This document shows positions 11,201-52,500 of a DNA stretch of 64,000 bases, piece by piece; position 1 is the first letter of the stretch; each line of letters begins with the position of its first letter. The notes below the pieces were generated by a model. The model ran no database searches and was not told the DNA's origin. It saw only the letters and a list, made by a program, of their open reading frames with translations. The stretch is taken from the NCBI GenBank assembly GCA_002269645.1, contig NIVC01002732.1, positions 62,001 to 126,000 on the forward strand, in the 5' to 3' direction. The translations under genes were made by a program, and so were the position numbers. Source of the DNA: Macrostomum lignano (Eukaryota).

Positions 11201-14200
11201 CGATCCGGCCTTGGGTAATTTCTGCATTCAGAGTTAGTAAAATCTAATCTCTCTAATCTCGTGTCTAATCGCATTTCTCACTCTCATGTCTTTTCTCTAA
11301 TCTCTCTAATCTCTCAGTGTCATGTCTATCTAATGTCTCAGTCTCATGTCTATCTAAACTCTCTGTGTCATGTCTATCTCATATCAGTCTCATGTCTATC
11401 TAAACTCTCTGTGTCATGTCTATCTAATCTTTCACTCTCATGTCTATCTACATGTAATCTCTCAGTCTCACGTCTATCTAATCTCTCAGTGTCTATCTAA
11501 TCTTTCACTCTCATGTCTATCTACATGTAATCTCTCAGTCTCACGTCTATCTAATCTCTCAGTGTCTATCTAATCTTTCACTCTCATGTCTATCTAATCT
11601 CTCAGTCTCATGTCTATCTAATGTCTTAGTCTTCGCATACTCAAAACTGAATTGCTAACAATCATACTAGTTAACACAAGTGGTGCTAATGAGGTAAAAT
11701 TAAAGTTAAACTTGAAACGCCTGCTAATTGCGGTTTCGTAACTAAAAATAAAAAAAAATTTATAACCACCATCTAACCTGTAATAAAAGTAACAATACTA
11801 TAATGAGCATATTAATAATAATTGGTTGAATTTGCGGTTTGTCTCAATGCGACGTTTTTTATGTCGGTGTGCTTGCTTCGCACCTTTTCCCGCCGTTTTG
11901 TCTGTCTTTAATTACAAATTGCAAAGTTGCTACTTCTGCTTGCCTTCGTAAGTAATATATTTATACTTTAAGCATATAAACAAATACTGCAGCGCGCCAA
12001 TTCAATTAAATGCAATACAGAATTTTTAATCCTATTGTGCACTGGTGCATGATTTGTCCCATCGTTTGCTATGTTTATATGATCATCTCGTCATCTGCCC
12101 AGTGTGCGCTCATTGCGTGACCTTTGCCCTCCCCGACCATCTGCAGCCGACTTGATGCTGGCGCCTCCGCCAGCTTCTCTGCCGGCCGCTCGCAGCGAGA
12201 CAAATGTCGGCCCGCTGGATGCCGATGACCAGCAGCCGCCTCGGGCTGGCAGCTTCAGTGAGTGGCTGTGTGTCTGGCTGTGTGTCTGGCTGTGTGTCTG
12301 CCTGTGTCTGCCTGTGTGTCTGCCTGTGTGTCTGCCTGTGTGTCTGGCTGTGTCTGCCTGTGTGTCTGACTGTGCGTCTGGCTGTGTCTGGCTGTGTGTC
12401 TGCCTGTGTGTCTGGCTGTGTCTGGCTGTGTGTCTGGCTGTGTGTCTGGCTGTGTGTCTGGCTGTGTGTCTGCCTGTGTCTGCCTGTGTGTCTGCCTGTG
12501 TGTCTGCCTGTGTGTCTGCCTGTGTGTCTGCCTGTGTGTCTGCCTGTGTGTCTGCCTGTGTGTCTGCCTGTGTGTCTGCCTGTGTCTGCCTGTGTGTCTG
12601 CCTGTGTCTGGCTGTGTGTCTGACTGTGTGTCTGGCTGTGTGTCTGGCTGTGTGTCTGGCTGTGTGTCTGGCTATGTGTCTGCCTGTGTGTCTGCCTGTT
12701 TGTCTGCCTGTGTGTCTGCCTGTGTCTGCCTGTGTGTCTGACTGTGTGTCTGGCTGTGTGTCTGCCTGTGTCTGCCTGTGTCTGGCTATGTGTCTGCCTG
12801 TGTGTCTGGCTGTGTCTGGCTGTGTGTCTGGCTATGTGTCTGGCTGTGTGTCTGGCTATGTGTCCGCCTGTGTCTGCCTGTGTGTCTGGCTCTGTGTCTG
12901 GCTGTGTGTCTGACTGTGTGTCTGGCTATGTGTCTGGCTATGTTTCTGTCTTTCTGTTTGGCTGTCTGTGGTTGTGTGTGTCTTTCTGTCTGCATCTGCG
13001 AGTCTGTCCTGCTGTCTGTTTGTCTTGTCTGTCTGTCCAGCTCCCCTCTGCCTTGCTGCACAGCCAGTTTTTCAATCGCCCATGCGAATCCGTCGCCATG
13101 CAGGCCGAGAGCTGGCGCCTCCCTCTAGCGGCGTGGCTGTCGGCCGTTCCAGCAGCGACAGAGAGACGGGCGGCAAAGCCGACCACGTTCGATTCTTCTC
13201 TTCTCCCGCTGATAAGAAGGTAACGGTTAAATAAGAGTCTGACATAGTCAATAAGAGTCAGACAGGGTCAGTAAGGGTCAGTAAGAGTCAGGCAGGGTCA
13301 GTAAGAGTCAGACAGGATCAGTAAAAGTCAGAAAGGGTCAGTAAGAGTCAGACAGGGTCAGTAAGAGTCAGATAGGGTCAGTAAGAGTCAGACAGGGTTA
13401 GTAAGAGTCAGATAGGGTCAGTAAGAGTCAGAAAGGATCAGTAAGAGTCAGATAAGGTCAGTAAGAGTCAGACAGGATCAGTAAGAGTCAGACAGGATCG
13501 GTAAGAGTCAGATAAGGTCAGTAAGAGTCATAAAGGGTCAGTAAGAGTCATAAAGGGTCAGTAAGAGTCAGATAGAGTCAGTAAGAGTCAGACAGGGTCA
13601 GTAAGAGTCAGACAGGGTCAGTAAGAGTCAGATAGGGTCAGTAAGAGTCAGACAGGATCAGTAAGAGTCAGATAAGGTCAGTAAGAGTCAGACAGGATTA
13701 GTAAGAGTCAGACAGGATCAGTAAGAGTCAGACAGGATCAGTAAGAGTCAGACAGGGTCAGTAAGAGTCAGACAGGATCAGTAAGAGTCAGACAGGGTCA
13801 GTAAAAGTCAGAAAGGGTCAGTAAGAGTCAGACAGGATCGGTAAGAGTCAGACAGGATCAGTAAGAGTCAGACAGGGTCAGTAAGAGTCAGACAGGGTCA
13901 GTAAGAGTTAGACAGGGTCAGTAAGAGTCAGACAGGGTCAGTAAAAGTCAGAAAGGGTCAGTAAGAGTCAGACAGGATCGGTAAGAGTCAGCCAGGGTCA
14001 GTTAGACTCCGACAGGATCCGTAAGAGTCAGACAGGGTCAGTTAGAGTCATACACAGAACAAGAGGGAACGATCTCGCTCCACTGGATCTGCAATTCCGC
14101 AGGACCCAGACTCGGAGCGGCAGAAGATCTACCAGAGCATCAGCAGTCACGAGAACATACAGAACGTGCCGTCAGACTTCGGTCAGTACATTGTGCAGCA

Positions 14201-16896
14201 CAAGGTTGACACCCGTTTGCAACAGCTTCGCTCAACTACCGGCGATTCAAAATCGGACTTTGATCGATTGAAAGATTATCAATTGGCTTTGCACGAGATT
14301 TTATTTGCTTGCATGAGCCACGTTCGAGCTCTCACCGTTCTGGATTTATTGTTCGTTCGCACCTGGCCGGAGAGCTGTCAAGAGATTATGAAACAATTAG
14401 GCTTGCACTTTGTGCCGAGATGCATCCAGTTGTACAAGAATTTGTTAGAGTGCATCGGCAAGCCCAGTTTAAACGAGTTTGTTGCTACGGGCAAAATAAC
14501 CGGCTTCGGTCAGAGACTGCTAGCCTGGTACAGCGATGAGCAGAACTTTCTCAACTTCAAACTGCTCAGCTTGAGCTTTGGCTTCTCGCGTAGCAGCAGA
14601 TCTCACACCGGAAGTAAACGGTCGACCGGAAATGAAGACGATATTATACTCAGGCTGGAATCCTTAAGGCGAGAGAATGCCGAATTGAATCGGTTTATTC
14701 AGCTGGCTGAGCACCATGAGGCCGCTCAGAGACTGGATTTCAAAGCCTATTATTCTATGAATATGCAGTTCACCATGCGGATGTTCCTGCTGCTGCAGAC
14801 TGCGGTCAAGAGCGCCAGGAAGGCCAAGAGTTCCTACAAACTGGCTGGTGAGTGTCTTTATTGTGGCACAGAGTTCAGTCTGGAGCTCTCCCTGATGTGT
14901 CTGTGCCATCTATCTGCTCTGTCCCTGATGTGTCTGTGCCATCTATCTGCTCTCTCCCTGATGTGTCTGTGCCATCTATCTGCTCTGTCCCTGATGTGTC
15001 TGTGCCATCTATCTGCTCTGTCCCTGATGTGTCTGTGCCATCTATCTGCTCTCTCCCTGATGTGTCTGTGCCATCTATCTGCTCTGTCCCTGATGTGTCT
15101 GTGCCATCTATCTGCTCTCTCCCTGATGTGTCTGTGCCATCTATCTGCTCTCTCCCTGATGTGTCTGTGCCATCTATCTGCTCTCTCCCTGATGTGTCTG
15201 TGCCATCTATCTGCTCTCTCCCTGATGTGTCTGTGCCATATATCTGCTCTGTCCCTGATGTGTCTGTGCCATCTATCTTCTCTCCCTGATGTGTCTGTGC
15301 CATCTATCTGCTCTCTCCCTGATGTGTCTGTGCCATCTATCTGCTCTCTCCCTGATGTGTCTGTGCCATCTATCTGCTCTCTCCCTGATGTGTCTGTGCC
15401 ATCTATCTGCTCTCTCCCTGATGTGTCTGTGCCATCTATCTGCTCTCTCCCTGATGTGTCTGTGCCATCTATCTGCTCTCTCCCTGATGTGTCTGTGCCA
15501 TCTATCTGCTCTGTCCCTGATGTGTCTGTGCCATCTATCTGCTCTGTCCCTGATGTGTCTGTGCCATCTATCTGCTCTCTCCCTGATGTGTCTGTGCCAT
15601 CTATCTGCTCTCTCCCTGATGTGTCTGTGCCATCTATCTGCTCTCTCCCTGATGTGTCTGTGCCATCTATCTGCTCTGTCCCTGATGTGTCTGTGCCATC
15701 TATCTGCTCTCTCCCTGATGTGTCTGTGCCATCTATCTGCTCTGTCCCTGATGTGTCTGTGCCATCTATCTGCTCTGTCCCTGATGTGTCTGTGCCATCT
15801 ATCTGCTCTCTCCCTGATGTGTCTGTGCCATCTATCTGCTCTCTCCCTGATGTGTCTGTGCCATATATCTGCTCTCTCCCTGATGTGTCTGTGCCATCTA
15901 TCTGCTCTCTCCCTGATGTGTCTGTGCCATCTATCTGCTCTGTCCCTGATGTGTCTGTGCCATCTATCTGCTCTGTCCCTGATGTGTCTGTGCCATCTAT
16001 CTGCTCTGTCCCTGATGTGTCTGTGCCATCTATCTGCTCTGTCCCTGATGTGTCTGTGCCATCTATCTGCTCTGTCCCTGATGTGTCTGTGCCATCTATC
16101 TGCTCTCTCCCTGATGTGTCTGTGCCATCTATCTGCTCTCTCCCTGATGTGTCTGTGCCATCTATCTGCTCTGTCCCTGATGTGTCTGTGCCATCTATCT
16201 GCTCTGTCCCTGATGTGTCTGTGCCATCTATCTGCTCTCTCCCTGATGTGTCTGTGCCATCTATCTGCTCTCTCCCTGATGTGTCTGTGCCATCTATCTG
16301 CTCTCTCCCTGATGTGTCTGTGCCATCTATCTGCTCTGTCCCTGATGTGTCTGTGCCATCTATCTGCTCTGTCCCTGATATGTCTGTGCCATCTATCTGC
16401 TCTGTCCCTGATGTTGCCCCAACTTCCCAACCCTACCCAGAGAGAGATCTTCCCGACCTAGAGAAGTGCCAAGAGAAAGCCAAGATGGTGGTTGACTACA
16501 GCAATTTCACCAGCGTACGACTGAAAGAACTGAGCAGACAGCTGGTTCTGAGTTCAACATTCAAATCATTCTGGGTTCGCTGCAAACTAGACAAAGATCA
16601 CGTGGACCGAGTCAGGGATCAGATCTCCCATTTGCACACCTGTCAGCTGGTACAGACTCGCGAGGTTGCTATGCCCGGATTTGAGAATTATCGATTGAGA
16701 TTGTTAGTGTTTAGCGAGTTCCTGCTCATCGTGTCCGAGACCGAGGAGCCCAAGGGTGTTGTTAAATACCAGCTGCTGCGGCATCTAGGTGAGTGCTGGT
16801 CTGGGGTGGCTGGCTAGTTTGCTAGGTTATTGTTAGGTAATAGGTAGGTAAAATAGCATGATGATGGACTTGTAGGTGAATTGGATTGATTGATGA

Positions 16897-26265: not shown

Positions 26266-26578
26266 AGCAGCCTAGTGGTTAGAGCGTCGGACTCACGACT
26301 TGAAGGTCGGGGGTTCGATTCCCGATCCCACTGAAACAATTTGTGTCCTTGAGCAAGACACTGTAGCTCTGCATTGCTTCAGTTCACCCAGCTGTAAAAT
26401 GGGTGCCAGCATTAGCTGGGGTAATTGAGGGTGTGTGGTGCCCCCCCTCCCAGTCCTTGGACTGAACAGCCGTACGCAGCCTTCAGATGCGCCGCGCAAT
26501 AGCTGCGGCTGAGCTGTCGGTTGCACATCTGCCCTTTGTGGCAGGTCTAATCAATTATTATTATTATTATTATTATTA
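26266..26578 (+). mobile_element. tRNA-derived SINE with CORE-like central domain and (ATT)n tail
   Basis: A-box TAGTGGTTAGAG, B-box GGTTCGATTCC, CORE-like gtgtccttgagcaagacact...ctgtaaaatggg, (TTA)n tail; second copy at 35625-35812. Confidence 0.85.
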
Positions 26579-32850: not shown

Positions 32851-34209
32851 GCCGGAACGACACCACAGCTAAGTGCGCCGAGAAAGTGACAATCCCCGAA
32901 TTCTGTTGGCTATTAAAAGTGCATTCGCAGGACAAAATTCTGCTGACGTCAGAGGCTGCACAGCGGTAGCAATGCAGGTTGCCCTGGATTGTCCATGAAT
33001 GACCAATTATCCTGCTAGAAACTTATAGGAAGAGGATCGGAGCGAAAGCATTGTAAAAAAGGCGAGCGAGAGCCGCAGAAGGGACCTTAGAAAGTTTCCT
33101 TCGCATCCCGCAACTCCTCTCCAGTCGAAGTCTGTGCAGGCTTTCCTCTGACGCGTCCTAAAGTGCAGTCAGTAGTTGGCCTATTTTTAGCCAGCAACCC
33201 AGGGCACCGGAGTCGTGGAATACTGCTCCTTGTGATCTGGGGAGGGACACCGTTTCAGCTACCAGTTCCAACTCTTCCTGAAGCTGCTTTCCTTTATATT
33301 TTTCACACTTTTACTCGTAGCCGATGAGTTCGGTGTCTGCTGGAAGACCTATTGCACCCTGTTCCCGCACTTGTTCCTGACTTGAGTTGCCACTAAGCTG
33401 GATGTGAAGTGGATGAAGAAGTTACCTGGATTAAATATCTTTCCAGAAACTCCGCATATTGTCCCAATGGAAAACCATTGCTGCTCAAGCTGACCAAGCA
33501 GTTTAATTGTCGCTGGTCTTCGGTATCAAATCCGGTCTTTCACCTGCCGGATTAGTAGGTAGATGTCTCCCCGAAAGCTGATTGTCTGGGTGGGCTTTGG
33601 ACAGGGCGTCCTTGATTTTCCAATCCAGATGTTGTTAACACGAGAGCTCCAGGAGCATTTCGGATAGGGCAGTATGTGTACTGCAAATGATAATAAATAT
33701 TCCCAATACACACTCGATCCGTTTAATCGCCAAGTTCCCACCAGCCTGAAGTGGAAAATCTTTTTTAGACCACCATCGCCCTCGATAAGCCCCTGCCTTA
33801 CCCCCCCCCCACCCTCCATTCTGGGCCTCTCTCGCCTGCGCAATTGGAAAAGATTTCTTCACCAAGCCGAGGAACCCAAAAAGGCAATGCAAGCGGAGCG
33901 CGTTGCTTTTTATACTTCCGGGATTGCGTTTGCTTGAACGGCCGTTGGGTTGGGAGAAAGGCGCTGTGGGGTAAGCGGGGTCAGAAATCCAGGGCCTTGT
34001 CCGAGCCAATTGGGGTTGAAGGAATTAGAGGAACACAAATTCGACTGCGGGTATATCTCTGTATGTGTGTCCAAATCCGCTGGAGGGAGTGGGGCAGGAC
34101 TTTTGCACTTTTAGCTCGTATAAGTCGCAGATCCCAAAGCGCGTTGCATGGTCTCGGGATGGATTTTAGAAAAAGGATCATTGTAGCCCGTCTTCTTCTG
34201 GCGCAGGCC

Positions 34210-34236
34210 TAGGGTTAGGGTTAGGGTTAGGGTTAG
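34210..34236 (+). repeat. Interstitial telomeric repeat (TTAGGG) x about 4.5
   Basis: tagggttagggttagggttagggttag. Confidence 0.9.
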
Positions 34237-34435
34237 CCCCAAGCAGGAAGTTTGGCGTTCTTCCGCGTGTCTGAAAAAAGGAATCGACAAAACTGGTCGG
34301 TCGAATTCTACTGGACGCGAAGGCTGCACGAGAGGGCTCGCCCAGCCCCACCGCCGCCTCCCCGGTGGGGATAAATTATAACTCTCTATTTCCCGTGTCT
34401 AGGTCGATAACACGTCACAGTTCAATTCCCTAATA

Positions 34436-35398
34436 ATGGGCTCCAGCAGCTCAGCATTGAGTAGGCGTACTCAACAGTTGTCAATATTGGACGAGTTTCA
34501 AGTTCAATCGATGAGATCAGACGAACTCGATGGCTTGGAGGTGGCAACAGCAGGTGACGATCAACAACAATTCGAGTTTTCCCTGAGCCGCTTACCCTAC
34601 GAGTGTCTGTGTAGGATCTCTTCTCATTTGAGCAGCGACGACTTGCTCAGCCTGTGCCAGACCAGCCCGGAGAACTGCAGACTGTTCGGCGCCGAGGTGT
34701 TCTGGACGTCGGCTGGACCGCGATCCAGCTCCAGAGAATCGCTGTACGAATCATTGAACCACGCGTTGGAACGGAAGCTCTGCATCCCTGTGGAGAGTCT
34801 AAACAATGGCACCTACCTGCCGTCGCTTGAAGAAGCAGACAGCTACTCTGGGCGAGTTGTCTACCTGCACGATTTGAACTGCCGCAATGCAGCGGTTGTC
34901 GCGGGCTCCGGCAGGTCCGGCATCGGATCAGAGGGCAGCCGTCTGAGCATTCACGACTACGTGCCGGGCCTGCCTAAAGGCACCTATCAGGTGACTCTGC
35001 GGGCGAAACTCGGTGCTCACTGGCGCCTACAGGGTGTCACTGAGGTGCTGCTGGTGCCGGATGCGCCCAGGCTCGACTGCCTGCTCCGAGCTCGCATTCC
35101 CGAGCGGAAGTGGCGCAGTCTGGCCTTCAGACACGGCTTCGAGCGCTGGTTCTGCCTTCGACTCGGCCGCCTGAGCCTGCCGCGCTGCAGCGGCATCCGA
35201 GTACAGATTGTCAACAGCCGGATTAGCAAGAGCCATCTGAAGGAGGGCGTCTATTTGGACTGCATCGAGCTGACGCCGCTGGACTGCCCCGTCGCTGAGT
35301 TTGTCGGCTATCGTCGGACGAGACGAAAAGATGAAGCAGGCGCCGCCGCCGTCGCCGCCACGGATGCTGCAGCAGAAGCTTATTGCCAGGTGTTGTGA
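34436..35398 (+). CDS. F-box protein with N-terminal myristoylation-like motif and C-terminal PP2/Nictaba-like lectin domain (320 aa, single coding exon)
   Basis: Uninterrupted GC-rich ORF. MGSSSS start; F-box LSRLPYECLCRISSHLSSDDLLSLCQTS; PP2-like GLPKGTYQVTLRAKL...WFCLRLGRL...HLKEGVYLDCIELTPL. A 5'UTR acceptor (tttcccgtgtctag) ends at 34402. Confidence 0.8.
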   Translation: MGSSSSALSRRTQQLSILDEFQVQSMRSDELDGLEVATAGDDQQQFEFSLSRLPYECLCRISSHLSSDDLLSLCQTSPENCRLFGAEVFWTSAGPRSSSRESLYESLNHALERKLCIPVESLNNGTYLPSLEEADSYSGRVVYLHDLNCRNAAVVAGSGRSGIGSEGSRLSIHDYVPGLPKGTYQVTLRAKLGAHWRLQGVTEVLLVPDAPRLDCLLRARIPERKWRSLAFRHGFERWFCLRLGRLSLPRCSGIRVQIVNSRISKSHLKEGVYLDCIELTPLDCPVAEFVGYRRTRRKDEAGAAAVAATDAAAEAYCQVL

Positions 35399-35624
35399 CA
35401 ACTAACTGCTATTGCGTTGGAGCGACTTTTCCTAGTGACACGCGGATGTCACTTGGGAGCAAATTTGCTTAAACCTGGGTTAGACTGACTTCAGCCAGCT
35501 AAACTAGGGTATGCCATGGTAAAACTTGGGTAAACTGACATAAATCATGATTAAACCTGGGAGTACACTAGCGTAAACTGGGGTAGACTATGGTAGACTG
35601 CTGTAAACTACTGGTTAGTTATGT

Positions 35625-35812
35625 AATAACAAATAATTGATTACACCTGCCATCTGAACAGCTGCGTACTGGGGGGTCGCCAAAAACACCCTCAATTACC
35701 CATTTTACAGCTGGGTGAACTGAAGCAATGTAGAGTTAAGTGTCTTGCTCAAGGACACAAATTGTTCCGAGCGGGTCAATAATCGAACCCCGACCTTTCA
35801 ATCGTAAGGTTG
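35625..35812 (-). mobile_element. Truncated, internally deleted copy of the same SINE
   Basis: Reverse complement shares aacaatttgtgtccttgagcaagacact...ttgcttcagttcacccagctgtaaaatggg and the 3' end gcagg..taatcaattatt with 26266-26578. Confidence 0.85.
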
Positions 35813-36680
35813 TTCGCGTAGATTTTAAAGTCAATGTCAAACTGGAGCATCACACACAGGAAGTTCAGACTACAATTATGTATCGTAGATAGTTGGAAGG
35901 AGAGCATTTTCGGGGCTAAACGATTTTTGTGGAATACGTAGCTTTACCTGTAGTTATAGGTACGCATAAGGAATGTAGAAAGAGGTGCGTTGTAAAAAAG
36001 TCACATTTGGAAGCAGACGGTTCAAATGTTTTGTAATTTTAACACTGGCGCTTTGTTACAACTTTTAGATTTTAATAATGTTTGCGTCAAGTCCCTTTTA
36101 AATGTTCCTTCCATAGTTTTTGTATATTCTCCACAGCCTCTACTTGCTACTGAATGCGATGAGTAGACGACTCGCGTGTTCGCATAGATTTTAGATAAGA
36201 CTTGGTTTCGTAGAAATTAAAATTATGTATTTTTCTAAGTCTACTGCAAAGCTTTACAAATAAATAAAAATATTTAAGACTATCGTTTATGTGGCTTTTC
36301 TACGAAATAAAACTAAATATTTCAATTTTCATTATTGATTATTATATCAATTGTAGGAATTATGCATGCCCATTACTTTATTGTTTTTCCATAATTATAA
36401 CAAAATAGTATTTTGCTTATGAAACAGAAGAAATTATTGTGAAACCTGATGCACGATTACTACTACTACTACTATTACTACTACTAGCTCGTAAATGTAA
36501 TATACCTACTGTAAAATGCATCATATCAGTTACTTTAATCACGCACGCGACTTTAGCATGACCTCATTAACTCACAAATCCAGTGCTCAAGGCAACAGTA
36601 AACTACCCAGCAGCCAACGAGCAGTCAAGTCCATCCCGCTGACCCCGAGCACGCCACATAGATAAAGCACTCAGACACAC

Positions 36681-36832
36681 CTCGCACATGGTGTACAGCG
36701 GCGCAGGCTTGTACACTTTCTGAGCTTGGGGCTTGGCTATGTAGTACTCGTGCCTGTGAGTCCCATACATTTGATCCACTCGGCTGGGATTATGCAATAC
36801 ACGATTGTTCGGGTGCAGCAGACTTAAGCAGG
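36681..36832 (-). CDS. Possible orphan exon (LLHPNNRVLHNPSRVDQMYGTHRHEYYIAKP...MCE)
   Basis: Open frame, GAG|gtgtgt donor; acceptor weak; partner exons not established. Confidence 0.25.
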
Positions 36833-37029
36833 CTTAAGGAATGAAAACTGATTCCCGAAGCAGTCAGCTGTTCCACCACCTGCTTCATTTAATATTACTT
36901 TTTTTCTAAACAGAATTTATATGAGGAATATTCATTAACTAGAAAAAATAAGAAAGAAATAGTTATGTGCACCCCTAAGTGTTTTCTCAGAATCTTTAAT
37001 GTAGAAATTAAATTAAACCTGTGTAACAA

Positions 37030-42490: not shown

Positions 42491-43279
42491 TTACCCATAT
42501 CTCTTTTCTCTTAGCTTCAAACTTGGCTTCGTATTCGCCACTTGGCTGGGCTCCAAAAAACAGGATTTCGACTGCAATAGTAAAAACTCCGTCAGCTCCA
42601 GTTAGGCGCAAACTTCTACTACAAACCGCATTGTTACTTCAGCTAACTATTGCCTGTACCTACCCAAGAAAACCTAGTCTGTTTTCACTCACACATCTAG
42701 TAGCCACACTCTCTGTAAGAGAAATAACAGTTATCATTTTGTATGTTTCAACCCAACGTTTTGTGTGCAAAGCTATTTTTTTCTAATCATTCAACATGCG
42801 CTTCTAGAACCACGCATTTTTAGGAGACGAAATGAACTTCTCTCTCTATCTATAGGTGCTTAATAACCCAAGCCCTCCCATTGAGCATTCGTGTATATTT
42901 ATCTGAGGCCAACCTGCAGCAGTAGCTATGCTATGCTTTGTTATTCAGTACACTTCTCAATTCTGAGAGACAGGCATGGATGCTGGGCCACCCCATCAAC
43001 AAAGTCTGTTATATCTTCTCTTTCTGTGCTGAAAACTTCTGACCGTTGCCTTCTCCCTCTCTCTCCCCTCCCTCCCTCTCTCTTTCCCTTCCATTGGAGG
43101 CGTCCATAGCAACAGCTTCTCCAGTAGTATTCTCAGCCACTCAGGGCATTATTAAGCATTATTAGAACGCCGGACTGCAGCTCGAAGCCCGTGACAGAGA
43201 AACAGACTAGCCAAGCAAACCTTAGAACTAAATATTTAAAAAATAACAAATAGAATTATAACAAAGAATAGCAAGAAAA

Positions 43280-43580
43280 ATGCCATCCTCGAATGGCGAA
43301 TTAGTCAAAGCGTTTCGTGAAATTTCGCACGAATTTAAAACGCTTCAACAGACTCGATTGAATGGACGAAGCGATCAAGGAGTGGCCAGATTGAGCAGTT
43401 TGGATGTGGAAGATTTGGCTGACAGGCTGGAGCAGCTGAGGTCAAGCCTGGCTGAGTGCCTGACCGAAGTTGAGGGACAGCTGCGGGAGAGTCAGCTGGC
43501 AGCGGCAGACGCTCGCAACTTCTACAGGGCGCTCGGCGAGGCAGTGGGGGCTGATGAAGAAGCGCTGCGGCGACGCGACG
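43280..43580 (+). CDS. DTHD1-like exon 1, coiled coil
   Basis: ATG at 43280, GAC G|gtgaga donor. Confidence 0.7.
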
Positions 43581-46500
43581 GTGAGAGTGACAAATGAGTG
43601 AATAATGAGAGTGACAAATGAGTGAATGATGAGATTGACAAATGAGTGAATGATGGGAGTGAATAATAAGTGAATAATGAGAGTGAATAATGAGAGTGAC
43701 AAATGAGAGTGACAAATGAGTGAATAATGAGAGTGAATAATAAGTGAATAATGAGAGTGAAAATGAGTGAATAATGAGAGTGACAAATGAGTGAATAATG
43801 AGAGTGAATAATAAGTGAATAATGAGAGTGAAAAATGAGTGAATAATGAGAGTGACAAATGAGTGAATAATGAGAGTGAATAATAAGTGAATAATGAGAG
43901 TGAAAAATGAGTGAATAATGAGAGTGACAAATAAGTGAATAATGAGAGTGACAAATGAGTGAATAATGATAGTGACAAATGAGTGAATAATGAGAGCGAC
44001 AAATGAGTGAATGATGGGAGTGAATAATAAGTGAATAATGAGAGTGACAAATGAGTGAATAATGATAGTGACAAATGAGTGAATAATGAGAGTGACAAAT
44101 GAGTGAATGATGGGAGTGAATAATAAGTGAATAATGAGAGTGACAAATGAGTGAATAATGATAGTGACAAATGAGTGAATAATGAGAGTGATAAATGAGT
44201 GAATGATGAGAGTGACAAATGAGTGAATGATGGGAGTGAAAAATGAGTGAATAATGAGAGTGACAAATGAGTGAATAATGAGAGTGACAAATGAGGGAAT
44301 AATGATAGTGACAAATGAGTGAATAATGAGAGTGACAAATGAGGGAATAATGAGAGTGACAAATGAGTGAATAATGAGAGTGATAAATGAGTGAATAATG
44401 ATGGACATTGGATTAGAGACTATAACCATGAGACGTAGTGAAAACACAAGCTACACAGGTGCCAGTGGATTAAGTACAGTTGAGGCATTACTTAAATAAT
44501 TAATTGTTTGGCCACACAGAATAATATCAATATAACTAGTCATCACTCACTGGTAAGGGATACTTTCCCACTTACGGGGGGCGGTCTGTACGCATTTCTA
44601 TGGGATTACATCTGCATCAGATGAAGCTGATTTCTTGAGTCTTCATCCCTATTTCTGTCTCCACCCGCGTCTCCCTGCGCATCAACTTGGTTGCCATGGG
44701 GGAGGACAGAATCCGCTTGCAGACGAGAGAGGCGAGGTTGGAAGATGAGTGGAGGATTTCGCGAGAATGGGAGAAATTCTGAATCCCTAACGCTGGGCTA
44801 AAAAAATTGCTACAAAAGTGCGCGCTGGAATGAAAAATTATAATTGGCAACTGTTTCACATTCTGTCGATAAAATCTTTTTATTTCCACACCCGCGTTCT
44901 GTCAGTAAAGTTTTTGACAGTCGCAAAATGCTTTTTGATGCTTTTTCCAGGAAGAATTGGCTGCTGCTCTAAAGAAGACATGAATAGCTTGGAAGAGAGA
45001 AATGCTTTGTAGGGAGACACAAAGTTAGATGCGAGAGAATGGTGGAAAGAATTGCGAAGAGAACAGAGAGGAGATGGTGATAGAAGGGCTGCAAGGAGGG
45101 ACAGAGGGGAAGAAGGAGAGTAAGACGAGATGGAGATAGAAGAAGGAGAGGGAGAGAAAGGAGAGGGTGGGAAGGAGAGGGTGAGAAGGAGAGGGAGAGA
45201 AGGGAGGGAGAGGGAGAGGGAGAGGGTGGGAAGGAGAGGGAGAGGGAGAGAAGGAGAGGGAGAGGCAGAGAAGGAGAGGGAGAGAAGGAGAGGGAGAGGG
45301 AGAGAAGGAGAGGGAGAGAAGGGGAGGGAGAGGGAGAGGGTGGGAAGGAGAGGGTGAGAAGGAGAGGGAGAGAAGGGGAGGGAGAGGAGAGGGTGGGAAG
45401 GAGAGGGTGAGAAGGAGAGGGAGAGAAGGGGAGGGAGAGGGAGAGAAGGAGAGGGAGAGAAGGTGAGGGAGAGGGAGACAAGGAGAGGGAGAGGAGGAGA
45501 GGGAGAGAAAGAGAGCGAGAGGATAGGGGATAGAGAAGGGGAGATGGAGAGGGAGAGGCGGAGTGAGAGGAGGGAGAGAGGTGAGAGAGATGAGAAGGAA
45601 GGAGAAAAACAGAGGTAGTGAGATGAAGGAAGCAAAAGTGAGACCGATGCGAGACTCAGGTGCAATAAAAAGCGTAAAAAAATTTAAGTGCGCCAGTTAT
45701 AAAGATGCAGCACACTGAAAATCGGATATAAAAACAGATGCTCAACATTCAGCCGATCCCAATTCTCATCCCAACTCCGTCGCGACCACTTCAGAGGCGA
45801 TCAACTCCATAGAGGACCACCGGGAGCTGGACGAGCGAGCGGCAGCAAGCGAAGAGGAGAACAAGCAGTTGGCCAACGGCCTGCGATTGAAGTCCACGGT
45901 TGCAGACATTGGCGACCAGTTTCAAAGGCTTGAAAACACCCTGAAGGAGAGCGCAATCAATTGCACTAAGGCGAGGAAAAGGGCTGCCGCTATTCAAGAA
46001 GAGGTGAGGCTTTGTTTACAAAAAGTATCCTTCAGATTCTCAAAAACGTCATTAAGGTCACTAGAGTAACGCGTGTCTGTAAAGTGCTACTGAAGTGCTA
46101 CTAAAGTGCTACTGAAGTGCTACTGAAGTGCTACTGAAGTGTTACTAAAGTGTTACTGAAGTGTTACTAAAGTGTTACTGAAGTGCTACTGAAGTGCTAC
46201 TGAAGTGTTACTAAAGTGTTACTGAAGTGTTACTAAAGTGTTACTGAAGTGCTACTGAAGTGCTACTGAAGTGTTACTAAAGTGTTACTGAAGTGTTACT
46301 AAAGTGTTACTGAAGTGTTACTTAAGTGCTACTGAAGTGCTACTGAAGTGTTACTAAAGTGTTACTAAAGTGTTACTGAAGTGCTACTGAAGTGCTACTG
46401 AAGTGTTACTAAAGTGTTACTGAAGTGTTACTAAAGTGTTACTGAAGTGTTACTAAAGTGTTACTGAAGTGCTACTGAAGTACTACTAAAGTGTTACTGA

Positions 46501-49500
46501 AGTGCTACTGAAGTGCTACTGAAGTGTTACTAAAATTTCCCTGAAGCGTAGCTGAAGCGACTCTGTCCTGATCAATCAGCTCAGCTCACCTCCCCTTCCG
46601 ACGTCGCCAGCTTGAAGAGGCGAAACGGCGCGAAGAGGAGCGCCAGCGCCAGGAGGCCGAAGAGGCGGAGCGCCGGCGCCAGGAGGAGCTCCGGCGGCGC
46701 CAGGCGGACGAGGCTGCGGCTGCAAAAGCGGCCGCCGCCGAAGAGGCCAAACGTCGGCGCCGCGCCGAGGAGGCGGCCGGCGAAGACTCGGACGGCGACG
46801 ACGGCAGCGGCGGTCGGCACCGTCGAAAGTCGTCGTCGAGGCGCCGAGCGCGCGCCCGCGCCGAAGCCGAGGCGCAGCGGAAACGCGAGGCTGAAGCGGC
46901 CGCGGCCGCGGCCGCGGCGGAGGAGGCGGAGCGTCGCTGGCGGCCGGTGGTGCTCGCTGCCTCGATGGCCGACGAATCCGACGACGCCTCCGCCGCAGAA
47001 GCCGACAACGCCGCCTGCGCGATTCGAGCTCCGGACGGTGCGGTACAGCCGGACGACTTTAAGTGCACGCTGGTGCCGCTCGACCAGGCCGACGTCGGTT
47101 CGATTCCGCCAGGTGACGAGCTGGTCAGCGGCGTGGTGCGATTGGAACCGGCAGGGCTGTCCCGGGTGCAGATCAGCGGCGGGGGCGAGGGCCGGCGGCA
47201 CTGGTACTTCATGCTGCCGCACTGCGCTCAGCGGCAAGCGGCCAGGGAAACCGTGGTCTACGTGAGTGAGATGGGTGCAGGCTGAGCTGCTCTAAGTAAA
47301 ACGAAATCGATTTGCATTCTAAGAAATGGTCGCTAATTGTGTATTCCAAATCAAGAATGAGCCGTCTAGCAAATCAAATCGTTTTTTATAAAAGCATTTT
47401 CTATGAGATGGGTTTGTTTTTTAGGAATTTGATGTACTTTCTTGGAATCCAAGTTGTTTTCTAGGAAATGGGTTTGCTTCCTAGAAATTTGATGTATTCT
47501 CGGAAATAGGTTTTCTTCTAGGGAATGAATTTGCTTTCTACGAAATCGGTTTGTGTTTTGAAAGAATCAGCTTTCTCGGAAAAAAAATTCTTTGAGGAGA
47601 ATGGCTTCTTTATTTCCTAATCGGTTGGTTAATATTTAGAAAATAGATTGTTTCTAGGGAAGAATCTGCCTTTCTACGAATAGGCTTATATTTCTAAAAA
47701 TCTTTTGGTAGGCTTACTATTTAACTTTATAGCACTTAGATTTAACTTGGCAATCGGAGACTTTTTGTGCCTAATTCTAATAAAAATTTTTATGTGCATT
47801 TATTTACCAACGGATTAGCATTTCTAAGAAACTTTAAAAATAGCTTTCTATCTCAAAGAAACTTATTTATCGTCTTAGACGAAGCTTACTGAGTTTCCAA
47901 GAATGGTTCTATATTTCTAAGAAATTTTTTTTGATTCCCAAGAATGGGATGGCATTCTATAAGAAACATATTCGTATTCTAAGAATACGTTTCCATTTCT
48001 AGGAAACTTATTTTGATTCCCAAGAATGGGATGGCATTCTATAAGAAACATATTCGTATTCTAAGAATACGTTTCCATTTCTAGGAAACTTATTTTGATT
48101 CCCAAGAATGGGATGGCATTCTATAAGAAACATATTCGTATTCTAAGAATACGTTTCCATTTCTAGGAAACTTATTTTGATTCCCAAGAATTGGATGGCA
48201 TTCTATAAGAAACATATTCGTATTCTAAGAATACGTTTCCATTTCTAGGAAACTTATTTTGATTCCCAAGAATGGGATGGCATTCTATAAGAAACATATT
48301 CGTATTCTAAGAATACGTTTCCATTTCTAGGAAACTTTTTTTGATTCCCAAGAATTGGATGGCATTCTATAAGAAACATATTCGCATTCTAAGAATACGT
48401 TTCCATTTCTAGGAAACTTATTTTGATTCCCAAGAATTGGATGGCATTCTATAAGAAACATATTCGCATTCTAAGAATACGTTTCCATTTCTAGGAAACT
48501 TATTTTGATTCCCAAGAATGGGATGGCATTCTATAAGAAACATATTCGTATTCTAAGAATACGTTTCCATTTCTAGGAAACTTATTTTGATTCCCAAGAA
48601 TTGGATGGCATTCTATAAGAAACATATTCGTATTCTAAGAATACGTTTCCATTTCTAGGAAACTTATTTTGATTCCAAGAATGGGATGGCATTCTATAAG
48701 AAACATATTCGTATTCTAAGAATACGTTTCCATTTCTAGGAAACTTTTTTTGATTCCCAAGAATGGGATGGCATTCTATAAGAAACATATTCGTATTCTA
48801 AGAATACGTTTCCATTTCTAGGAAACTTATTTTGATTCCCAAGAATTGGATGGCATTCTATAAGAAACATATTCGCATTCTAAGAATACGTTTCCATTTC
48901 TAGGAAACTTATTTTGATTCCCAAGAATTGGATGGCATTCTATAAGAAACATATTCGCATTCTAAGAATACGTTTCCATTTCTAGGAAACTTATTTTGAT
49001 TCCCAAGAATTGGATGGCATTCTATAAGAAACATATTCGTATTCTAAGAATACGTTTCCATTTCTAGGAAACTTATTTTGATTCCCAAGAATTGGATGGC
49101 ATTCTATAAGAAACATATTCGCATTCTAAGAATACGTTTCCATTTCTAGGAAACTTATTTTGATTCCCAAGAATTGGATGGCATTCTATAAGAAACATAT
49201 TCGTATTCTAAGAATACGTTTCCATTTCTAGGAAACTTATTTTGATTCCCAAGAATGGGATGGCATTCTATAAGAAACATATTCGTATTCTAAGAATACG
49301 TTTCCATTTCTAGGAAACTTATTTTGATTCCCAAGAATGGGATGGCATTCTATAAGAAACATATTCGTATTCTAAGAATACGTTTCCATTTCTAGGAAAC
49401 TTATTTTGATTCCCAAGAATTGGATGGCATTCTATAAGAAACATATTCGTATTCTAAGAATACGTTTCCATTTCTAGGAAACTTATTTTGATTCCCAAGA

Positions 49501-52500
49501 ATGGGATGGCATTCTATAAGAAACATATTCGTATTCTAAGAATACGTTTCCATTTCTAGGAAACTTATTTTGATTCCCAAGAATTGGATGGCATTCTATA
49601 AGAAACATATTCGCATTCTAAGAATACGTTTCCATTTCTAGGAAACTTATTTTGATTCCCAAGAATTGGATGGCATTCTATAAGAAACATATTCGTATTC
49701 TAAGAATACGTTTCCATTTCTAGGAAACTTATTTTGATTCCCAAGAATGGGATGGCATTCTATAAGAAACATATTCGCATTCTAAGAATACGTTTCCATT
49801 TCTAGGAAACTTATTTTGATTCCCAAGAATTGGATGGCATTCTATAAGAAACATATTCGTATTCTAAGAATACGTTTCCATTTCTAGGAAACTTATTTTG
49901 ATTCCCAAGAATGGGATGGCATTCTATAAGAAACATATTCGTATTCTAAGAATACGTTTCCATTTCTAGGAAACTTATTTTGATTCCCAAGAATTGGATG
50001 GCATTCTATAAGAAACATATTCGTATTCTAAGAATACGTTTCCATTTCTAGGAAACTTATTTTGATTCCCAAGAATGGGATGGCATTCTATAAGAAACAT
50101 ATTCGCATTCTAAGAATACGTTTCCATTTCTAGGAAACTTATTTTGATTCCCAAGAATTGGATGGCATTCTATAAGAAACATATTCGTATTCTAAGAATA
50201 CGTTTCCATTTCTAGGAAACTTATTTTGATTCCCAAGAATGGGATGGCATTCTATAAGAAACATATTCGTATTCTAAGAATACGTTTCCATTTCTAGGAA
50301 ACTTATTTTGATTCCCAAGAATTGGATGGCATTCTATAAGAAACATATTCGTATTCTAAGAATACGTTTCCATTTCTAGGAAACTTATTTTGATTCCCAA
50401 GAATTGGATGGCATTCTATAAGAAACATATTCGCATTCTAAGAATACGTTTCCATTTCTAGGAAACTTATTTTGATTCCCAAGAATTGGATGGCATTCTA
50501 TAAGAAACATATTCGCATTCTAAGAATACGTTTCCATTTCTAGGAAACTTATTCGGAGTCTGCATTTCTAAGAAACCTATGTTACTTCTATATACTAAAA
50601 TTCTATCAGATCTACGAAGACGGTCGCTGGCAGGAGCGCCCATCGGCTGAGACGCACATCGATATGCAGGGCCTTCCAGCCCGCTGGGTGGAGACCAAAA
50701 TCACGGACACTTCAGTCACTGCGGTGGCGGTGAACAAACTCAAAACGGACAGATTCAGCGTTGGCAAACCCGGCATCCGGTACAGCAGCTCCGTTGACAA
50801 CAGAATTTGCCTCACCGTGCCTGAGGACGCGTTAAAAATCCAGCTTGACCAAACCATTGAAGTTCAGCCCGTTGACTCCTCGACTCTGGCTGTCATCAAG
50901 TCTCAGCTGCCGCGGGAGACTCACGGCCTGCTCACCTGCAGCTCCATCATTCAGCACAGTGAGTTCACTGTTCAGGATGTGACTGTCTCTCTCCTTAAAT
51001 TCCGCCTCAAACTCTACTTTACGAGCGTGTCTACTCAGGATCTACTTTAGGCTCTACTTTATCTACTCAGAAGCTACTCCAGACTCTACTTTATCTACTC
51101 AGAATCTACTTCAGGCTTTAATTTATCTACTCAGAATCTACTTCAGACTCTACTTTATCTACTCAGAATCTACCTCGGGCTCTACTTTATCTACTCAGAA
51201 TCTAGCTCGGGCTCTACTTTATCTACTCAGAATCTACCTCGGGCTCTACTTTATCTACTCAGAATCTACCTCGGGCTCTACTTTATCTACTCAGAATCTA
51301 GCTCGGGCTCTACTTTATCTACTCAGAATCTACCTCGGGCTCTACTTTATCTACTCAGAATCTAGCTCGGGCTCTACTTTATCTACTCAGAATCTAGCTC
51401 GGGCTCTACTTTATCTACTCAGAATCTACCTCGGGCTCTACTTTATCTACTCAGAATCTACCTCGGGCTCTACTTTATCTACTCAGAATCTACCTCGGGC
51501 TCTACTTTATCTACTCAGAATCTACCTCTTACTCTACTTTATCTTACTCAACCTCGGACTCTACCTTATCTGCTCAGAATCTACCTCGGGCTCTACTTTA
51601 CGCTCGTATCTACTCAGAAACCGCCCCAATCTCCAGCAAGAATGCAACACCAGACGCTCACCAAAAAATCAATCCACCCGCAGCCTCGATCTGCAAGAAC
51701 ACTCTGCGGCCGGTCACCTTCAACTTCCAGCTGCCGCTGAACCCGGCTGGCGCGAAGAAGACCCGACCGGGCACCGCTGGTGCAGCTGGCGGCGCCGCGT
51801 CCTCCGTGGTTGCTTCCGGCCGCCCGATGACGGCGAAGCCAAAGGCGACGCCAAACAGCGACGAGGAAGACGAGCTCGTCGTGCTGCTCGGCTGCGACGG
51901 GCAGCGTCGATGCGTCGGTGTCGGTGGCAGCGGTGGCGGCAGCTGGAGCGTCCTCGACCAGCTCGACATTGAGGAGGAGCCCGGAAAGGATATTGTGGGC
52001 TTCAGGACAACTCGATTCTACGATAGACGGTAAACAATTTTGTTGCTTGTTTAAATCCTCGATCCTAATCCTAAATCCCCTAATCCCAAATCCCCAAATC
52101 CCAAATCCCCTAATCCCAAATCCCCTAATCCCAAATCCCCTAATTCCAAATCCCCTAATTCCAAATCCCCTAATTCCAAATCCCCTAATCCCAAATCCCC
52201 TAATCCCAAATCCCCTAATTCCAAATCCCCTAATTCCAAATCCCCTAATCCCAAATCCCCTAATCCCAAATCCCCTAATCCCAAATCCCCTAATCCCAAA
52301 TCCCCTAATTCCAAATCCCCTAATTCCAAATCCCCTAATTCCAAATCCCCTAATTCCAAATCCCCAAATCCCCAATCCCCTAATCCCAGAGCCCCTAATC
52401 CCAAATCCCCAAATCCCTATTCCCCTAATCCCAAATCCCCAAATCCCAAATCCCCTAATCCCAAATCCCCTAATTCCAAATCCCCTAATTCCAAATCCCC

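What the first reader, a model, noticed from the sequence alone, without database searches (positions are those of the whole stretch)
34436..35398. Plant-style myristoylated F-box plus PP2/Nictaba-like lectin gene, intronless, in an animal genome
Seen: a 320-aa single-exon CDS among intron-rich genes, starting MGSSSS (Gly2, Ser6 myristoylation-like). It has an F-box (LSRLPYECLCRISSHLSSDDLLSLC) and a beta-rich C-terminus (GLPKGTYQVTLRAKL...WFCLRLGRL...HLKEGVYLDCIELTPL). Knowledge: the phloem protein 2 (PP2/Nictaba) domain typically reads L.PGTYEV.F.LKL...W.E...GEF...HWK.GL...G..I.P. F-box-PP2 fusions, several beginning MG...S as I recall, are characteristic of plants. The animal glycan-sensing F-box proteins (FBXO2/6) use a different domain, FBA. 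Inference: this may be a membrane-tethered, glycan-sensing SCF adaptor acquired horizontally or retained from a patchy ancient family, i.e. a little-described glycoprotein-ubiquitination route in an invertebrate.
Basis: partly seen in the sequence, partly recalled or inferred. Interest (0 to 1): 0.75.

Follow-up and report, generated by a model that had tools for sequence, protein, structure and literature searches.

The report
Divergent F-box plus PP2-like gene
An intact single-exon gene in what looks like an animal genome joins an F-box to a very divergent copy of the plant-type PP2/Nictaba lectin fold, but it has lost the tryptophans that fold uses to bind sugar, so it is probably a ubiquitin-ligase adaptor whose target is unknown.

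Summary
The ORF is real and sits exactly where stated: 34436-35398, + strand, 320 aa. Its F-box passes Pfam's threshold. The C-terminal half scores below threshold against Pfam PP2 directly (14.2 bits, cutoff 25). Homology is nevertheless well supported. The only true relatives among 1.84 billion representative proteins share the same architecture and pass the PP2 threshold themselves. A family profile hits the Nictaba crystal structure as its only significant PDB match. An HMM built without the query scores it at 54.8 bits, against 3.8 for the best of 5000 shuffles. No FBA signal was found.

Flanking + strand exons (RGS-like, RhoGEF, Death domain), shared host repeats and ordinary exon composition argue for a host gene in an animal-type genome. 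They argue against contamination or recent transfer.

All three Nictaba sugar-binding tryptophans (W15, W41, W151) are missing, and a roughly 20-residue Gly/Ser-rich insertion sits beside the W41 position. The MGSSSS motif fits the myristoylation pattern but is absent from every relative.

The known relatives are a bdelloid rotifer protein, rotifer-like metagenome genes and two unlabelled assemblies. The literature I could reach treats F-box-Nictaba proteins as plant proteins. Verdict: a divergent animal-side variant of a known architecture, of moderate interest.

The parts
34436..35398 (+). Complete 320-aa CDS (ATG to TGA) of the F-box/PP2-like protein, in a single ORF
   Evidence: homology
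34436..34456 (+). N-terminal MGSSSSA, which fits the N-myristoylation pattern G-{EDRKHPFYW}-x(2)-[STAGCN]-{P}; a prediction only, and not conserved in relatives
   Evidence: pattern match; relatives start MEAAL/MFLNY, MSLSI, MITEP, MAAKN
34583..34684 (+). F-box domain, aa 50-83 (LSRLPYECLCRISSHLSSDDLLSLCQTSPENCRL)
   Evidence: PF00646, 22.9 bits against cutoff 20.5, E=7.4e-5; it aligns with the F-boxes of P0001 and P0002
34769..35284 (+). Divergent PP2/Nictaba-like jelly-roll domain, about aa 112-283; the framework motifs are kept (N..YL, G.VV.L, L.I, PG.Y, R.KL, G.TE, WF, G, N, K.G, LDC.EL)
   Evidence: (PF14299, 14.2 bits, below threshold); fold
34871..34939 (+). Gly/Ser/Ala-rich insertion of about 20 aa (aa 146-168, DLNCRNAAVVAGSGRSGIGSEGS), absent from all relatives and from Nictaba, sitting at the V39-A40-W41 sugar-binding loop; it has no canonical intron boundaries
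   Evidence: alignments; modelled with pLDDT <50
35285..35395 (+). Low-complexity, Arg- and then Ala-rich C-terminal tail (aa 284-320), with a predicted helix at 302-319; it has no counterpart in the relatives
34371..34381 (+). ATAAATTATAA, a TATA-like element 55-65 nt upstream of the ATG (inferred promoter element)
   Evidence: read from the sequence; inference only
34209..34236 (+). Interstitial telomere-type repeat (TTAGGG, about 4.5 units), about 200 nt upstream of the ATG and the only such site in the window
34389..34402 (+). Polypyrimidine tract plus AG (TTTCCCGTGTCTAG|G), a possible splice acceptor in frame with the ORF; if it is used, the protein's N-terminus would differ
   Evidence: not testable without transcript data

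Best explanation
This is a genuine host-encoded, single-exon gene for a soluble F-box protein, the substrate-receptor subunit of an SCF (SKP1-CUL1-F-box) ubiquitin ligase. Its C-terminal substrate-recognition module is a highly divergent homologue of the PP2/Nictaba jelly-roll lectin domain. This is the same N-terminal F-box plus C-terminal Nictaba layout seen in plant F-box-Nictaba (PP2-B) proteins and in a small group of rotifer and rotifer-like proteins.

Shown: the ORF, the F-box, homology of the C-terminal domain to PP2/Nictaba, the absence of FBA, and the host context.

Inferred: the F-box binds SKP1 and the beta-sandwich presents a target for ubiquitination. The three tryptophans that form Nictaba's GlcNAc site are gone and a 20-residue loop is inserted at that site. 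The ligand is therefore most likely not a chitobiose-core or GlcNAc glycan bound in the Nictaba manner. It is probably another glycan bound through a remodelled surface, or more likely a protein or other non-glycan determinant. N-myristoylation at Gly2 is possible but would be specific to this lineage.
For: The ORF is intact. The F-box is above Pfam's gathering score. The exhaustive phmmer search returns only same-architecture proteins: P0001 at E=2.1e-5 over q47-298 and P0002 at E=1.5e-4. Both pass the PP2 gathering score at 41.6 and 40.7 bits against 25, and both carry an F-box. The family profile's only significant PDB hit is Nictaba 8ad2, at E=0.0014 over the whole domain. An HMM that excludes the query scores it at 54.8 bits, against a decoy maximum of 3.8. 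Columns invariant from Nictaba through to the query are the PP2 framework positions. The confidently modelled core (aa 169-282, pLDDT 65-88) is a jelly roll that matches PP2 phloem lectin at TM 0.51-0.55 and rmsd 3.1-3.8 A. Binding-site mapping gives a gap for W15, R169 for W41 and L268 for W151. Host context: GC3 of 0.69 lies within the neighbouring exons' range of 0.44-0.79; minisatellites lie on both sides; a 113-bp interspersed element 300 nt downstream of the stop recurs at 26292-26404; and RGS-like, DH and Death exon fragments lie on the same strand. Rotifer-like orthologues of the relatives have dN/dS of 0.47-0.59, so the family is under some constraint outside plants.
Against: The direct Pfam PP2 score is below threshold (14.2 bits against 25). 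The relatives in the custom HMM were found by their similarity to the query, so the 54.8-bit score is partly expected. Both structure models have low confidence overall (mean pLDDT 50.8 and 60.0), and the N-terminal third of the domain is not modelled. CBM6/CBM35 and Cry domain III folds match about as well as PP2 does. No orthologue of the query itself was found, so selection on this particular gene cannot be measured. There is no expression evidence. SKP1 binding and the nature of the ligand are inferred.
Confidence: 0.6

Rival explanations
1. One reading: a Gly2-myristoylated, membrane-tethered SCF adaptor whose PP2 domain reads glycans on exposed or misfolded glycoproteins. It would be functionally analogous to mammalian FBXO27/Fbs3, but built on the plant-type lectin fold.
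For: The architecture is right. MGSSSSA fits the myristoylation pattern. There is an animal precedent for a myristoylated lectin-type F-box protein, Fbs3 (PMC6389600). Plant F-box-Nictaba At2g02360 binds glycans with a specificity different from Nictaba's, so specificity in this fold can change. Relative P0001 keeps all three tryptophans, so the ancestor of this group was plausibly a lectin.
Against: The query keeps none of W15, W41 and W151 and has an insertion at the V39-W41 loop. The MG start is not shared by any relative. The N-terminus is uncertain because of the in-frame acceptor-like site at 34402. The myristoylation pattern has low specificity.
Confidence: 0.15
2. A decaying or functionless relic. 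The ORF would be a lineage-specific remnant of an F-box-PP2 gene that is no longer under selection and happens still to be open.
For: The ligand-binding tryptophans are lost, and there is a low-complexity insertion and an Ala-rich tail. There is no close homologue among 15 billion proteins. Only about 25% identity remains to the nearest relative. The N-terminal third of the domain is not foldable in the models. An ORF this long arises by chance in about 1.5% of composition-matched 64-kb sequences.
Against: All 320 codons are open, with the start in a good context (A at -3, G at +4). Framework residues of both domains are retained along the whole length. The GC1/GC2/GC3 pattern of 0.59/0.49/0.69 resembles that of the neighbouring coding exons. 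The F-box still passes Pfam's threshold.
Confidence: 0.15
3. Contaminant DNA, or a very recent horizontal transfer from a plant or fungus assembled into an animal scaffold.
For: The domain family is overwhelmingly found in plants and fungi (PMC6362431). The gene has no introns. CpG observed/expected is 0.96 in the ORF against 0.66 for the window.
Against: The ORF is embedded in the same minisatellite-rich sequence on both sides. It shares an interspersed element with a site 9 kb away. Its GC and GC3 fall within the range of the neighbouring exons. The upstream repeat is TTAGGG, not the plant TTTAGGG. No plant protein reached E<=1e-3 in the exhaustive search, whereas a rotifer protein did.
Confidence: 0.03
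4. An ordinary animal FBA-type (FBXO2/6/27/44-like) or other common F-box partner domain, misread as PP2.
For: FBA is also a beta-sandwich. The Skp1-FBG3 (3wso) and Fbs1 (2e31) complexes appear at ranks 25 and 29 in the full-length fold search.
Against: There is no Pfam FBA hit even at E<=10. The family profile hits Nictaba and no FBA chain in the PDB. The FBA fold matches have rmsd of 15-17 A and disappear from the top 50 in the domain-only search.
Confidence: 0.01

Closest known systems
Plant F-box-Nictaba / PP2-B proteins (for example Arabidopsis At2g02360)
   Same: N-terminal F-box followed by a C-terminal PP2/Nictaba jelly-roll domain, in a protein of about 270-340 aa; presumed SCF substrate receptor.
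   Different: The host is apparently an animal, not a plant. The domain is below Pfam's PP2 threshold. The conserved sugar-binding W15, W41 and W151 are all missing. There is a 20-aa insertion at the binding loop, a possible myristoylation motif and an Ala-rich tail.
Rotifer and rotifer-like F-box/PP2 proteins (Didymodactylos carnosus CAF0761029.1 = P0002; metagenome loci L003-L008; P0004) and P0001 (Logan DRR639055)
   Same: These are the nearest sequence relatives. They share the architecture, are single ORFs and are non-plant.
   Different: They are only 24-28% identical to the query. P0001 and P0002 pass Pfam PP2, and P0001, P0002 and the L003-L008 proteins keep two or three of the three tryptophans; P0004 has no recorded Pfam domain and keeps none. 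All lack the insertion and the MG start.
Nictaba (tobacco lectin, PDB 8ad2) and cucurbit phloem lectin PP2/Cus17 (PDB 7yaq, 7w4b)
   Same: The domain is homologous (profile E=0.0014) and the core has a similar jelly-roll fold (TM 0.41-0.55).
   Different: Those are stand-alone dimeric GlcNAc-oligomer lectins without an F-box, and their binding-site residues are not conserved here.
Mammalian FBXO27/Fbs3 and the FBXO2/6 FBA family
   Same: The logic is the same: an F-box plus a beta-sandwich glycan reader. Fbs3 is N-myristoylated and acts at endomembranes.
   Different: The recognition domain (FBA, PF04300) is unrelated, and no FBA signal is present here.

Membership tests
F-box proteins (PF00646) | Sequence match to the F-box profile above the curated threshold | tested here: met
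   22.9 bits against cutoff 20.5, aa 50-83
F-box proteins (PF00646) | Binds SKP1 and assembles into an SCF ligase | not testable with these tools
   Requires a pull-down or yeast two-hybrid assay
PP2/Nictaba domain (PF14299) | Direct match to the Pfam profile above the gathering score | tested here: not met
   14.2 bits against cutoff 25 (E=0.045), aa 180-281 on profile positions 57-148
PP2/Nictaba domain (PF14299) | Homology through intermediate sequences or profiles | tested here: met
   relatives pass the gathering score; profile hits Nictaba 8ad2 at E=0.0014; HMM without the query: 54.8 bits against a decoy maximum of 3.8
PP2/Nictaba domain (PF14299) | PP2-type jelly-roll beta-sandwich fold | tested here: inconclusive
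   the models have low confidence. The core matches PP2 at TM 0.51-0.55, but CBM6/35 and Cry domain III match equally well, and the N-terminal third is not modelled
Nictaba-type lectins (functional class) | Conserved carbohydrate-site residues Trp15, Trp41 and Trp151 (plus Tyr21 and Val39) | tested here: not met
   the query has a gap, R169 and L268 (V39 becomes G167; Y127 lies next to the Y21 column)
Nictaba-type lectins (functional class) | Binds GlcNAc oligomers or N-glycan cores | not testable with these tools
   Requires a glycan array, ITC or similar
F-box-Nictaba chimerolectin architecture | N-terminal F-box and C-terminal Nictaba-like domain in one polypeptide | tested here: met
FBA-type sugar-recognising F-box proteins (FBXO2/6/17/27/44) | FBA domain (PF04300) C-terminal to the F-box | tested here: not met
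   no hit at E<=10; no FBA chain in the profile search; none in the top 50
N-myristoylated proteins | Met-Gly start with a small or uncharged residue 3, Ser/Thr-type residue 6 and no Pro at 7 | tested here: met
   the pattern matches MGSSSSA. The pattern has low specificity, the motif is not conserved in relatives, and the true N-terminus is unverified
N-myristoylated proteins | Actual co-translational myristoylation by NMT | not testable with these tools
   Requires metabolic labelling or mass spectrometry

The most novel reading that the evidence does not exclude
A sparsely distributed non-plant lineage of F-box-PP2 adaptors exists, comprising this animal, bdelloid rotifers and unlabelled assemblies. 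In this genome one member has been rebuilt, with the Trp triad lost, a new loop added and an N-myristoyl anchor gained, into a membrane-associated SCF receptor for a ligand unlike any known for the Nictaba fold. That would be a plant-type lectin scaffold converging on the role FBXO27 plays in mammals.
Probability: 0.12. Interest if true: 0.7.

Novelty: new variant of a known kind. Interest (0 to 1): 0.45.

Why it matters
F-box-Nictaba proteins are treated in the literature as a plant speciality. A 2019 survey counted only three Nictaba-domain hits in all Metazoa, and a 2025 review still discusses the chimeras only in plants. This locus, together with the rotifer and rotifer-like genes found here, shows that the same two-domain architecture occurs in animal-type genomes. 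It also shows that the fold can lose its canonical sugar site while staying joined to an F-box. That bears on two questions: whether the F-box-lectin fusion is ancient and patchily retained or has been transferred, and how lectin scaffolds are re-used as general substrate-recognition modules. The practical impact is modest until expression, SKP1 binding and a ligand are demonstrated.

Tried and rejected
- Three word-indexed homologue searches returned almost nothing: no hit, then P0001 only, then P0001 plus P0004. The window protein itself is not in that collection.
- A single-sequence PDB search found nothing.
- The viral contig scan found no relatives.
- Rfam and tRNA scans of the window were empty.
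- The bacterial promoter/terminator scan gave no more than chance and does not apply to this genome.
- I could not name the organisms behind P0001 and P0004. A paper search for the run accessions found nothing, and cluster look-ups gave no names.
- Joining the DH and PH-like exons did not strengthen the ARHGEF11 match.
- One literature search was badly designed and returned irrelevant papers.
- I considered whether the 20-aa insertion is a retained intron and rejected it: it has no GT...AG boundaries or pyrimidine tract, and it is in frame (sequence).
- I considered whether the ORF is a minisatellite artefact like most other long ORFs in the window and rejected it: TRF reports no repeat between 32851 and 37017.

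Full report
OBSERVATION. The ORF is exactly as described: 34436-35398 on the + strand, 320 codons plus TGA, beginning MGSSSSALSRR, with every quoted peptide present. The window is unusual. TRF masks 26.8 kb of the 64 kb as minisatellites, and nearly all other long ORFs are frames that stay open through those repeats. This ORF is different, because it lies in the repeat-free stretch 32851-37017. By length alone it is only moderately improbable: 3 of 200 random 64-kb sequences with its composition contained an ORF of at least 320 aa. The case that it codes for protein therefore rests on homology.

DOMAINS. Pfam places an F-box at aa 50-83, above the gathering score (PF00646, 22.9 bits against 20.5). 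Against Pfam PP2 (PF14299), the C-terminal half scores only 14.2 bits against a cutoff of 25 (E=0.045). The aligned region is the right one, however: aa 180-281 on profile positions 57-148 of 148. No FBA or other F-box partner domain appears even at E<=10.

The exhaustive phmmer search of 1.84 billion cluster representatives found three proteins at E<=1e-3.
- P0001 matched at E=2.1e-5 over query residues 47-298.
- P0002 matched at E=1.5e-4.
- P0003 is a tandem-repeat artefact that matches only the 'SRLPYECLC' segment.

P0001 and P0002 both carry an F-box and both pass the PP2 gathering score, at 41.6 and 40.7 bits. A profile built from the three lectin domains has one significant match in the PDB: the tobacco lectin Nictaba (8ad2), at E=0.0014 and aligned end to end.

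As a test that does not include the query, I built an HMM from P0001, P0002, P0004 and the Nictaba sequence printed. It scores query residues 109-290 at 54.8 bits, whereas the best of 5000 shuffles of the same residues scores 3.8. One caveat applies: three of those four sequences were found through their similarity to the query.

In a nine-sequence alignment, the columns invariant from Nictaba to the query are the PP2 framework positions: L.I, PG.Y, G.T, W[FL], G and K.G. I conclude that the C-terminal domain is a true but very divergent homologue of the PP2/Nictaba domain.

STRUCTURE. The models are therefore weak, with mean pLDDT of 50.8 for the full length and 60.0 for the domain alone. The core at aa 169-282 reaches 65-88, while aa 106-168 stays below 50.

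Foldseek against the PDB returns jelly-roll beta-sandwiches.
- Cucumber phloem lectin PP2 (7yaq, 7w4b, 7vs6) matches at TM 0.51-0.55 and rmsd 3.1-3.8 A.
- Hinokiresinol synthase (8jmq) and Nictaba (8ad2, TM 0.41-0.47) also match.
- CBM6/CBM35 modules and Cry-toxin domain III score about as well.
- The Skp1-FBG3 and Fbs1 complexes appear only in the full-length search, at ranks 25 and 29 with rmsd 15-17 A. They are absent from the top 50 of the domain-only search.

The fold is consistent with PP2 but does not by itself settle the family.

THE SUGAR SITE IS GONE. The Nictaba crystal-structure paper defines the primary site as Thr14, Trp15, Tyr21, Val39, Ala40, Trp41, Asp148, Lys149 and Trp151. 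It states that Trp15, Tyr21, Val39, Trp41 and Trp151 are conserved in plant homologues, including the F-box ones (PMC11632377). The mapping by MAFFT was the same in local and global modes.
- The query has a deletion at Thr14-Trp15.
- It has Gly167-Ser168-Arg169 at Val39-Ala40-Trp41.
- It has Leu268 at Trp151.
- Tyr127 lies next to the Tyr21 column.

A Gly/Ser/Ala-rich insertion of about 20 residues (aa 146-168) sits right at the Val39-Trp41 loop. It is absent from every relative and is not bounded by intron signals. By contrast, P0001 keeps all three tryptophans, the rotifer protein keeps two (His, Trp, Trp), and P0004 keeps none (Asp, Tyr, Ala). If it binds a sugar at all, it does not do so in the Nictaba manner.

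MYRISTOYLATION. MGSSSSA satisfies the PROSITE-type pattern, and the ATG has A at -3 and G at +4. No relative starts with MG, however. The pattern also has low specificity. In addition, the stop codon that opens the frame (TAG at 34400-34402) is itself the AG of a pyrimidine-tract acceptor-like site, TTTCCCGTGTCTAG|G, so an upstream exon cannot be ruled out. The idea has a real animal analogue: mammalian Fbs3/FBXO27 is a myristoylated lectin-type F-box protein, although it is built on an FBA domain (PMC6389600).

GENOME CONTEXT. Several + strand exon fragments flank the gene, and each has a GTRAG donor just before its frame closes.

Upstream:
- an RGS-like fragment (PF09128, E=2.4e-4, 6716-7003);
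- a DH/RhoGEF fragment (E=2.4e-4, 14055-14885), whose only PDB matches below E=0.01 are ARHGEF11, with ARHGEF12 at E=0.23;
- a PH-like exon (16416-16814).

In that order, these match the architecture of RH-RhoGEFs (the p115/PDZ-RhoGEF/LARG family), which from my own knowledge are animal-type genes.

Downstream, a Death-domain fragment scores 22.2 bits against a cutoff of 22.6 (57396-57647).

Each of these hits is below threshold on its own, as expected for single exons. Together they make an animal genome probable, though not proven.

The F-box gene lies between these genes. It has a TATA-like ATAAATTATAA 55-65 nt upstream of the ATG, and polyadenylation signals at 35550 and 36259.

Several observations argue against contamination or recent transfer.
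- GC (0.59) and GC3 (0.69) lie within the range of the neighbouring exons, whose GC3 runs from 0.44 to 0.79.
- Minisatellites of the same style lie on both sides.
- A 113-bp interspersed element 300 nt past the stop recurs at 26292-26404 with 87% identity.
- The repeat 200 nt upstream is TTAGGG, not the plant-type TTTAGGG.

RELATIVES AND DISTRIBUTION.
- P0002 is annotated as an F-box domain-containing protein of the bdelloid rotifer Didymodactylos carnosus.
- A metagenome scan found seven loci. Six of them carry reading frames, complete or cut by the contig end, that are clear orthologues of P0002. They share the motif PLMKLIYFYLIDRKR, each complete copy is a single ORF of 332-334 aa, and in L003 and L005 the neighbours include an ankyrin-repeat-like ORF (read by eye), with a phosphofructokinase-like ORF (also read by eye) on L003.
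- Pairwise dN/dS among four of them is 0.47-0.59, so they evolve fast but under constraint.
- P0001 and P0004 come from unlabelled Logan assemblies.
- No plant protein reached E<=1e-3 with the query.
- The query's own sequence is absent from the 15-billion-protein collection.

In the literature, InterPro 71 listed only three Nictaba hits in Metazoa, and the F-box-Nictaba combination is described as shared by all Viridiplantae (PMC6362431). Two reviews discuss F-box-Nictaba proteins as plant proteins, and I found no paper on animal examples. The architecture in animals is thus visible in databases but, as far as I could find, undescribed.

MECHANISM. The best-supported reading is an SCF substrate receptor. 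The F-box docks on SKP1, and the remodelled PP2-like beta-sandwich binds the target. Both steps are inferred from family knowledge. With the sugar site lost, a non-glycan target or an unconventional glycan is more likely than Nictaba-style GlcNAc recognition. A lineage-specific myristoyl anchor is possible.

VERDICT. This is a divergent, non-plant variant of a known architecture. It is moderately interesting as a point about evolution and distribution, but its function is untested.

Noticed in passing
window 1-64000: About 42% of the window (26.8 kb) is minisatellite arrays, with periods mostly of 12-48 bp, tens of copies each and 85-98% identity. Most long ORFs in the window are frames that stay open through these arrays.
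   Followed up: partly
window 14886-16414 (within ORF 14166-16817): A 33-bp repeat with 46 copies at 98% identity lies between the DH-like and PH-like exons. Because 33 is a multiple of 3, it is open in frame and produces an 883-aa ORF. It is unclear whether it is intronic or encodes a run of 11-aa repeats.
   Followed up: no
window 6716-7003, 14055-14885, 16416-16814 (+): Exon fragments in the order RGS-like (PF09128), DH/RhoGEF (best PDB match ARHGEF11/12) and PH-like suggest an RH-RhoGEF (p115/PDZ-RhoGEF/LARG-type) gene upstream on the same strand. Each hit is below threshold on its own.
   Followed up: partly
window 57396-57647 (+): An exon fragment matches the Death domain at 22.2 bits against a cutoff of 22.6. 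It probably belongs to a second + strand gene spanning about 43-58 kb, with coiled-coil-like exons at 43262-43582 and 45719-46066.
   Followed up: partly
window 34209-34236: An interstitial telomere-type repeat (TTAGGG, about 4.5 units) lies about 200 nt upstream of the F-box gene's ATG. It is the only such site in the window, and none is expected by chance.
   Followed up: partly
window 35698-35808 (+) and 26292-26404 (-): A 113-bp interspersed element occurs twice at 87% identity, one copy 300 nt downstream of the F-box gene's stop. It looks like a short SINE or MITE-like repeat.
   Followed up: partly
window 47913-50553: An AT-rich 82-bp satellite with 32 copies at 98% identity (local GC about 0.31) is the largest single array in the window.
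   Followed up: no
L003 4248-5246; L005 1467-2471; L006 239-1234; L007 175-1173: Metagenome contigs carry single-ORF F-box/PP2 genes orthologous to the bdelloid rotifer protein P0002. All have His at the Nictaba W15 position but keep W41 and W151. Pairwise dN/dS is 0.47-0.59.
   Followed up: yes
P0003 (790 aa): A protein made of about 10 near-identical repeats of roughly 65 aa matched only the query's 'SRLPYECLC' segment (as 'SRLKYQCLCW'). I judged it a spurious, repeat-driven hit.
   Followed up: no
L001 1-1192: The called start of P0001 (MFLNY...) is probably too far upstream. An ATG at nt 130 follows a pyrimidine tract plus AG, which would give MEAALSVRLKDLP..., with the F-box almost at the N-terminus.
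   Followed up: no
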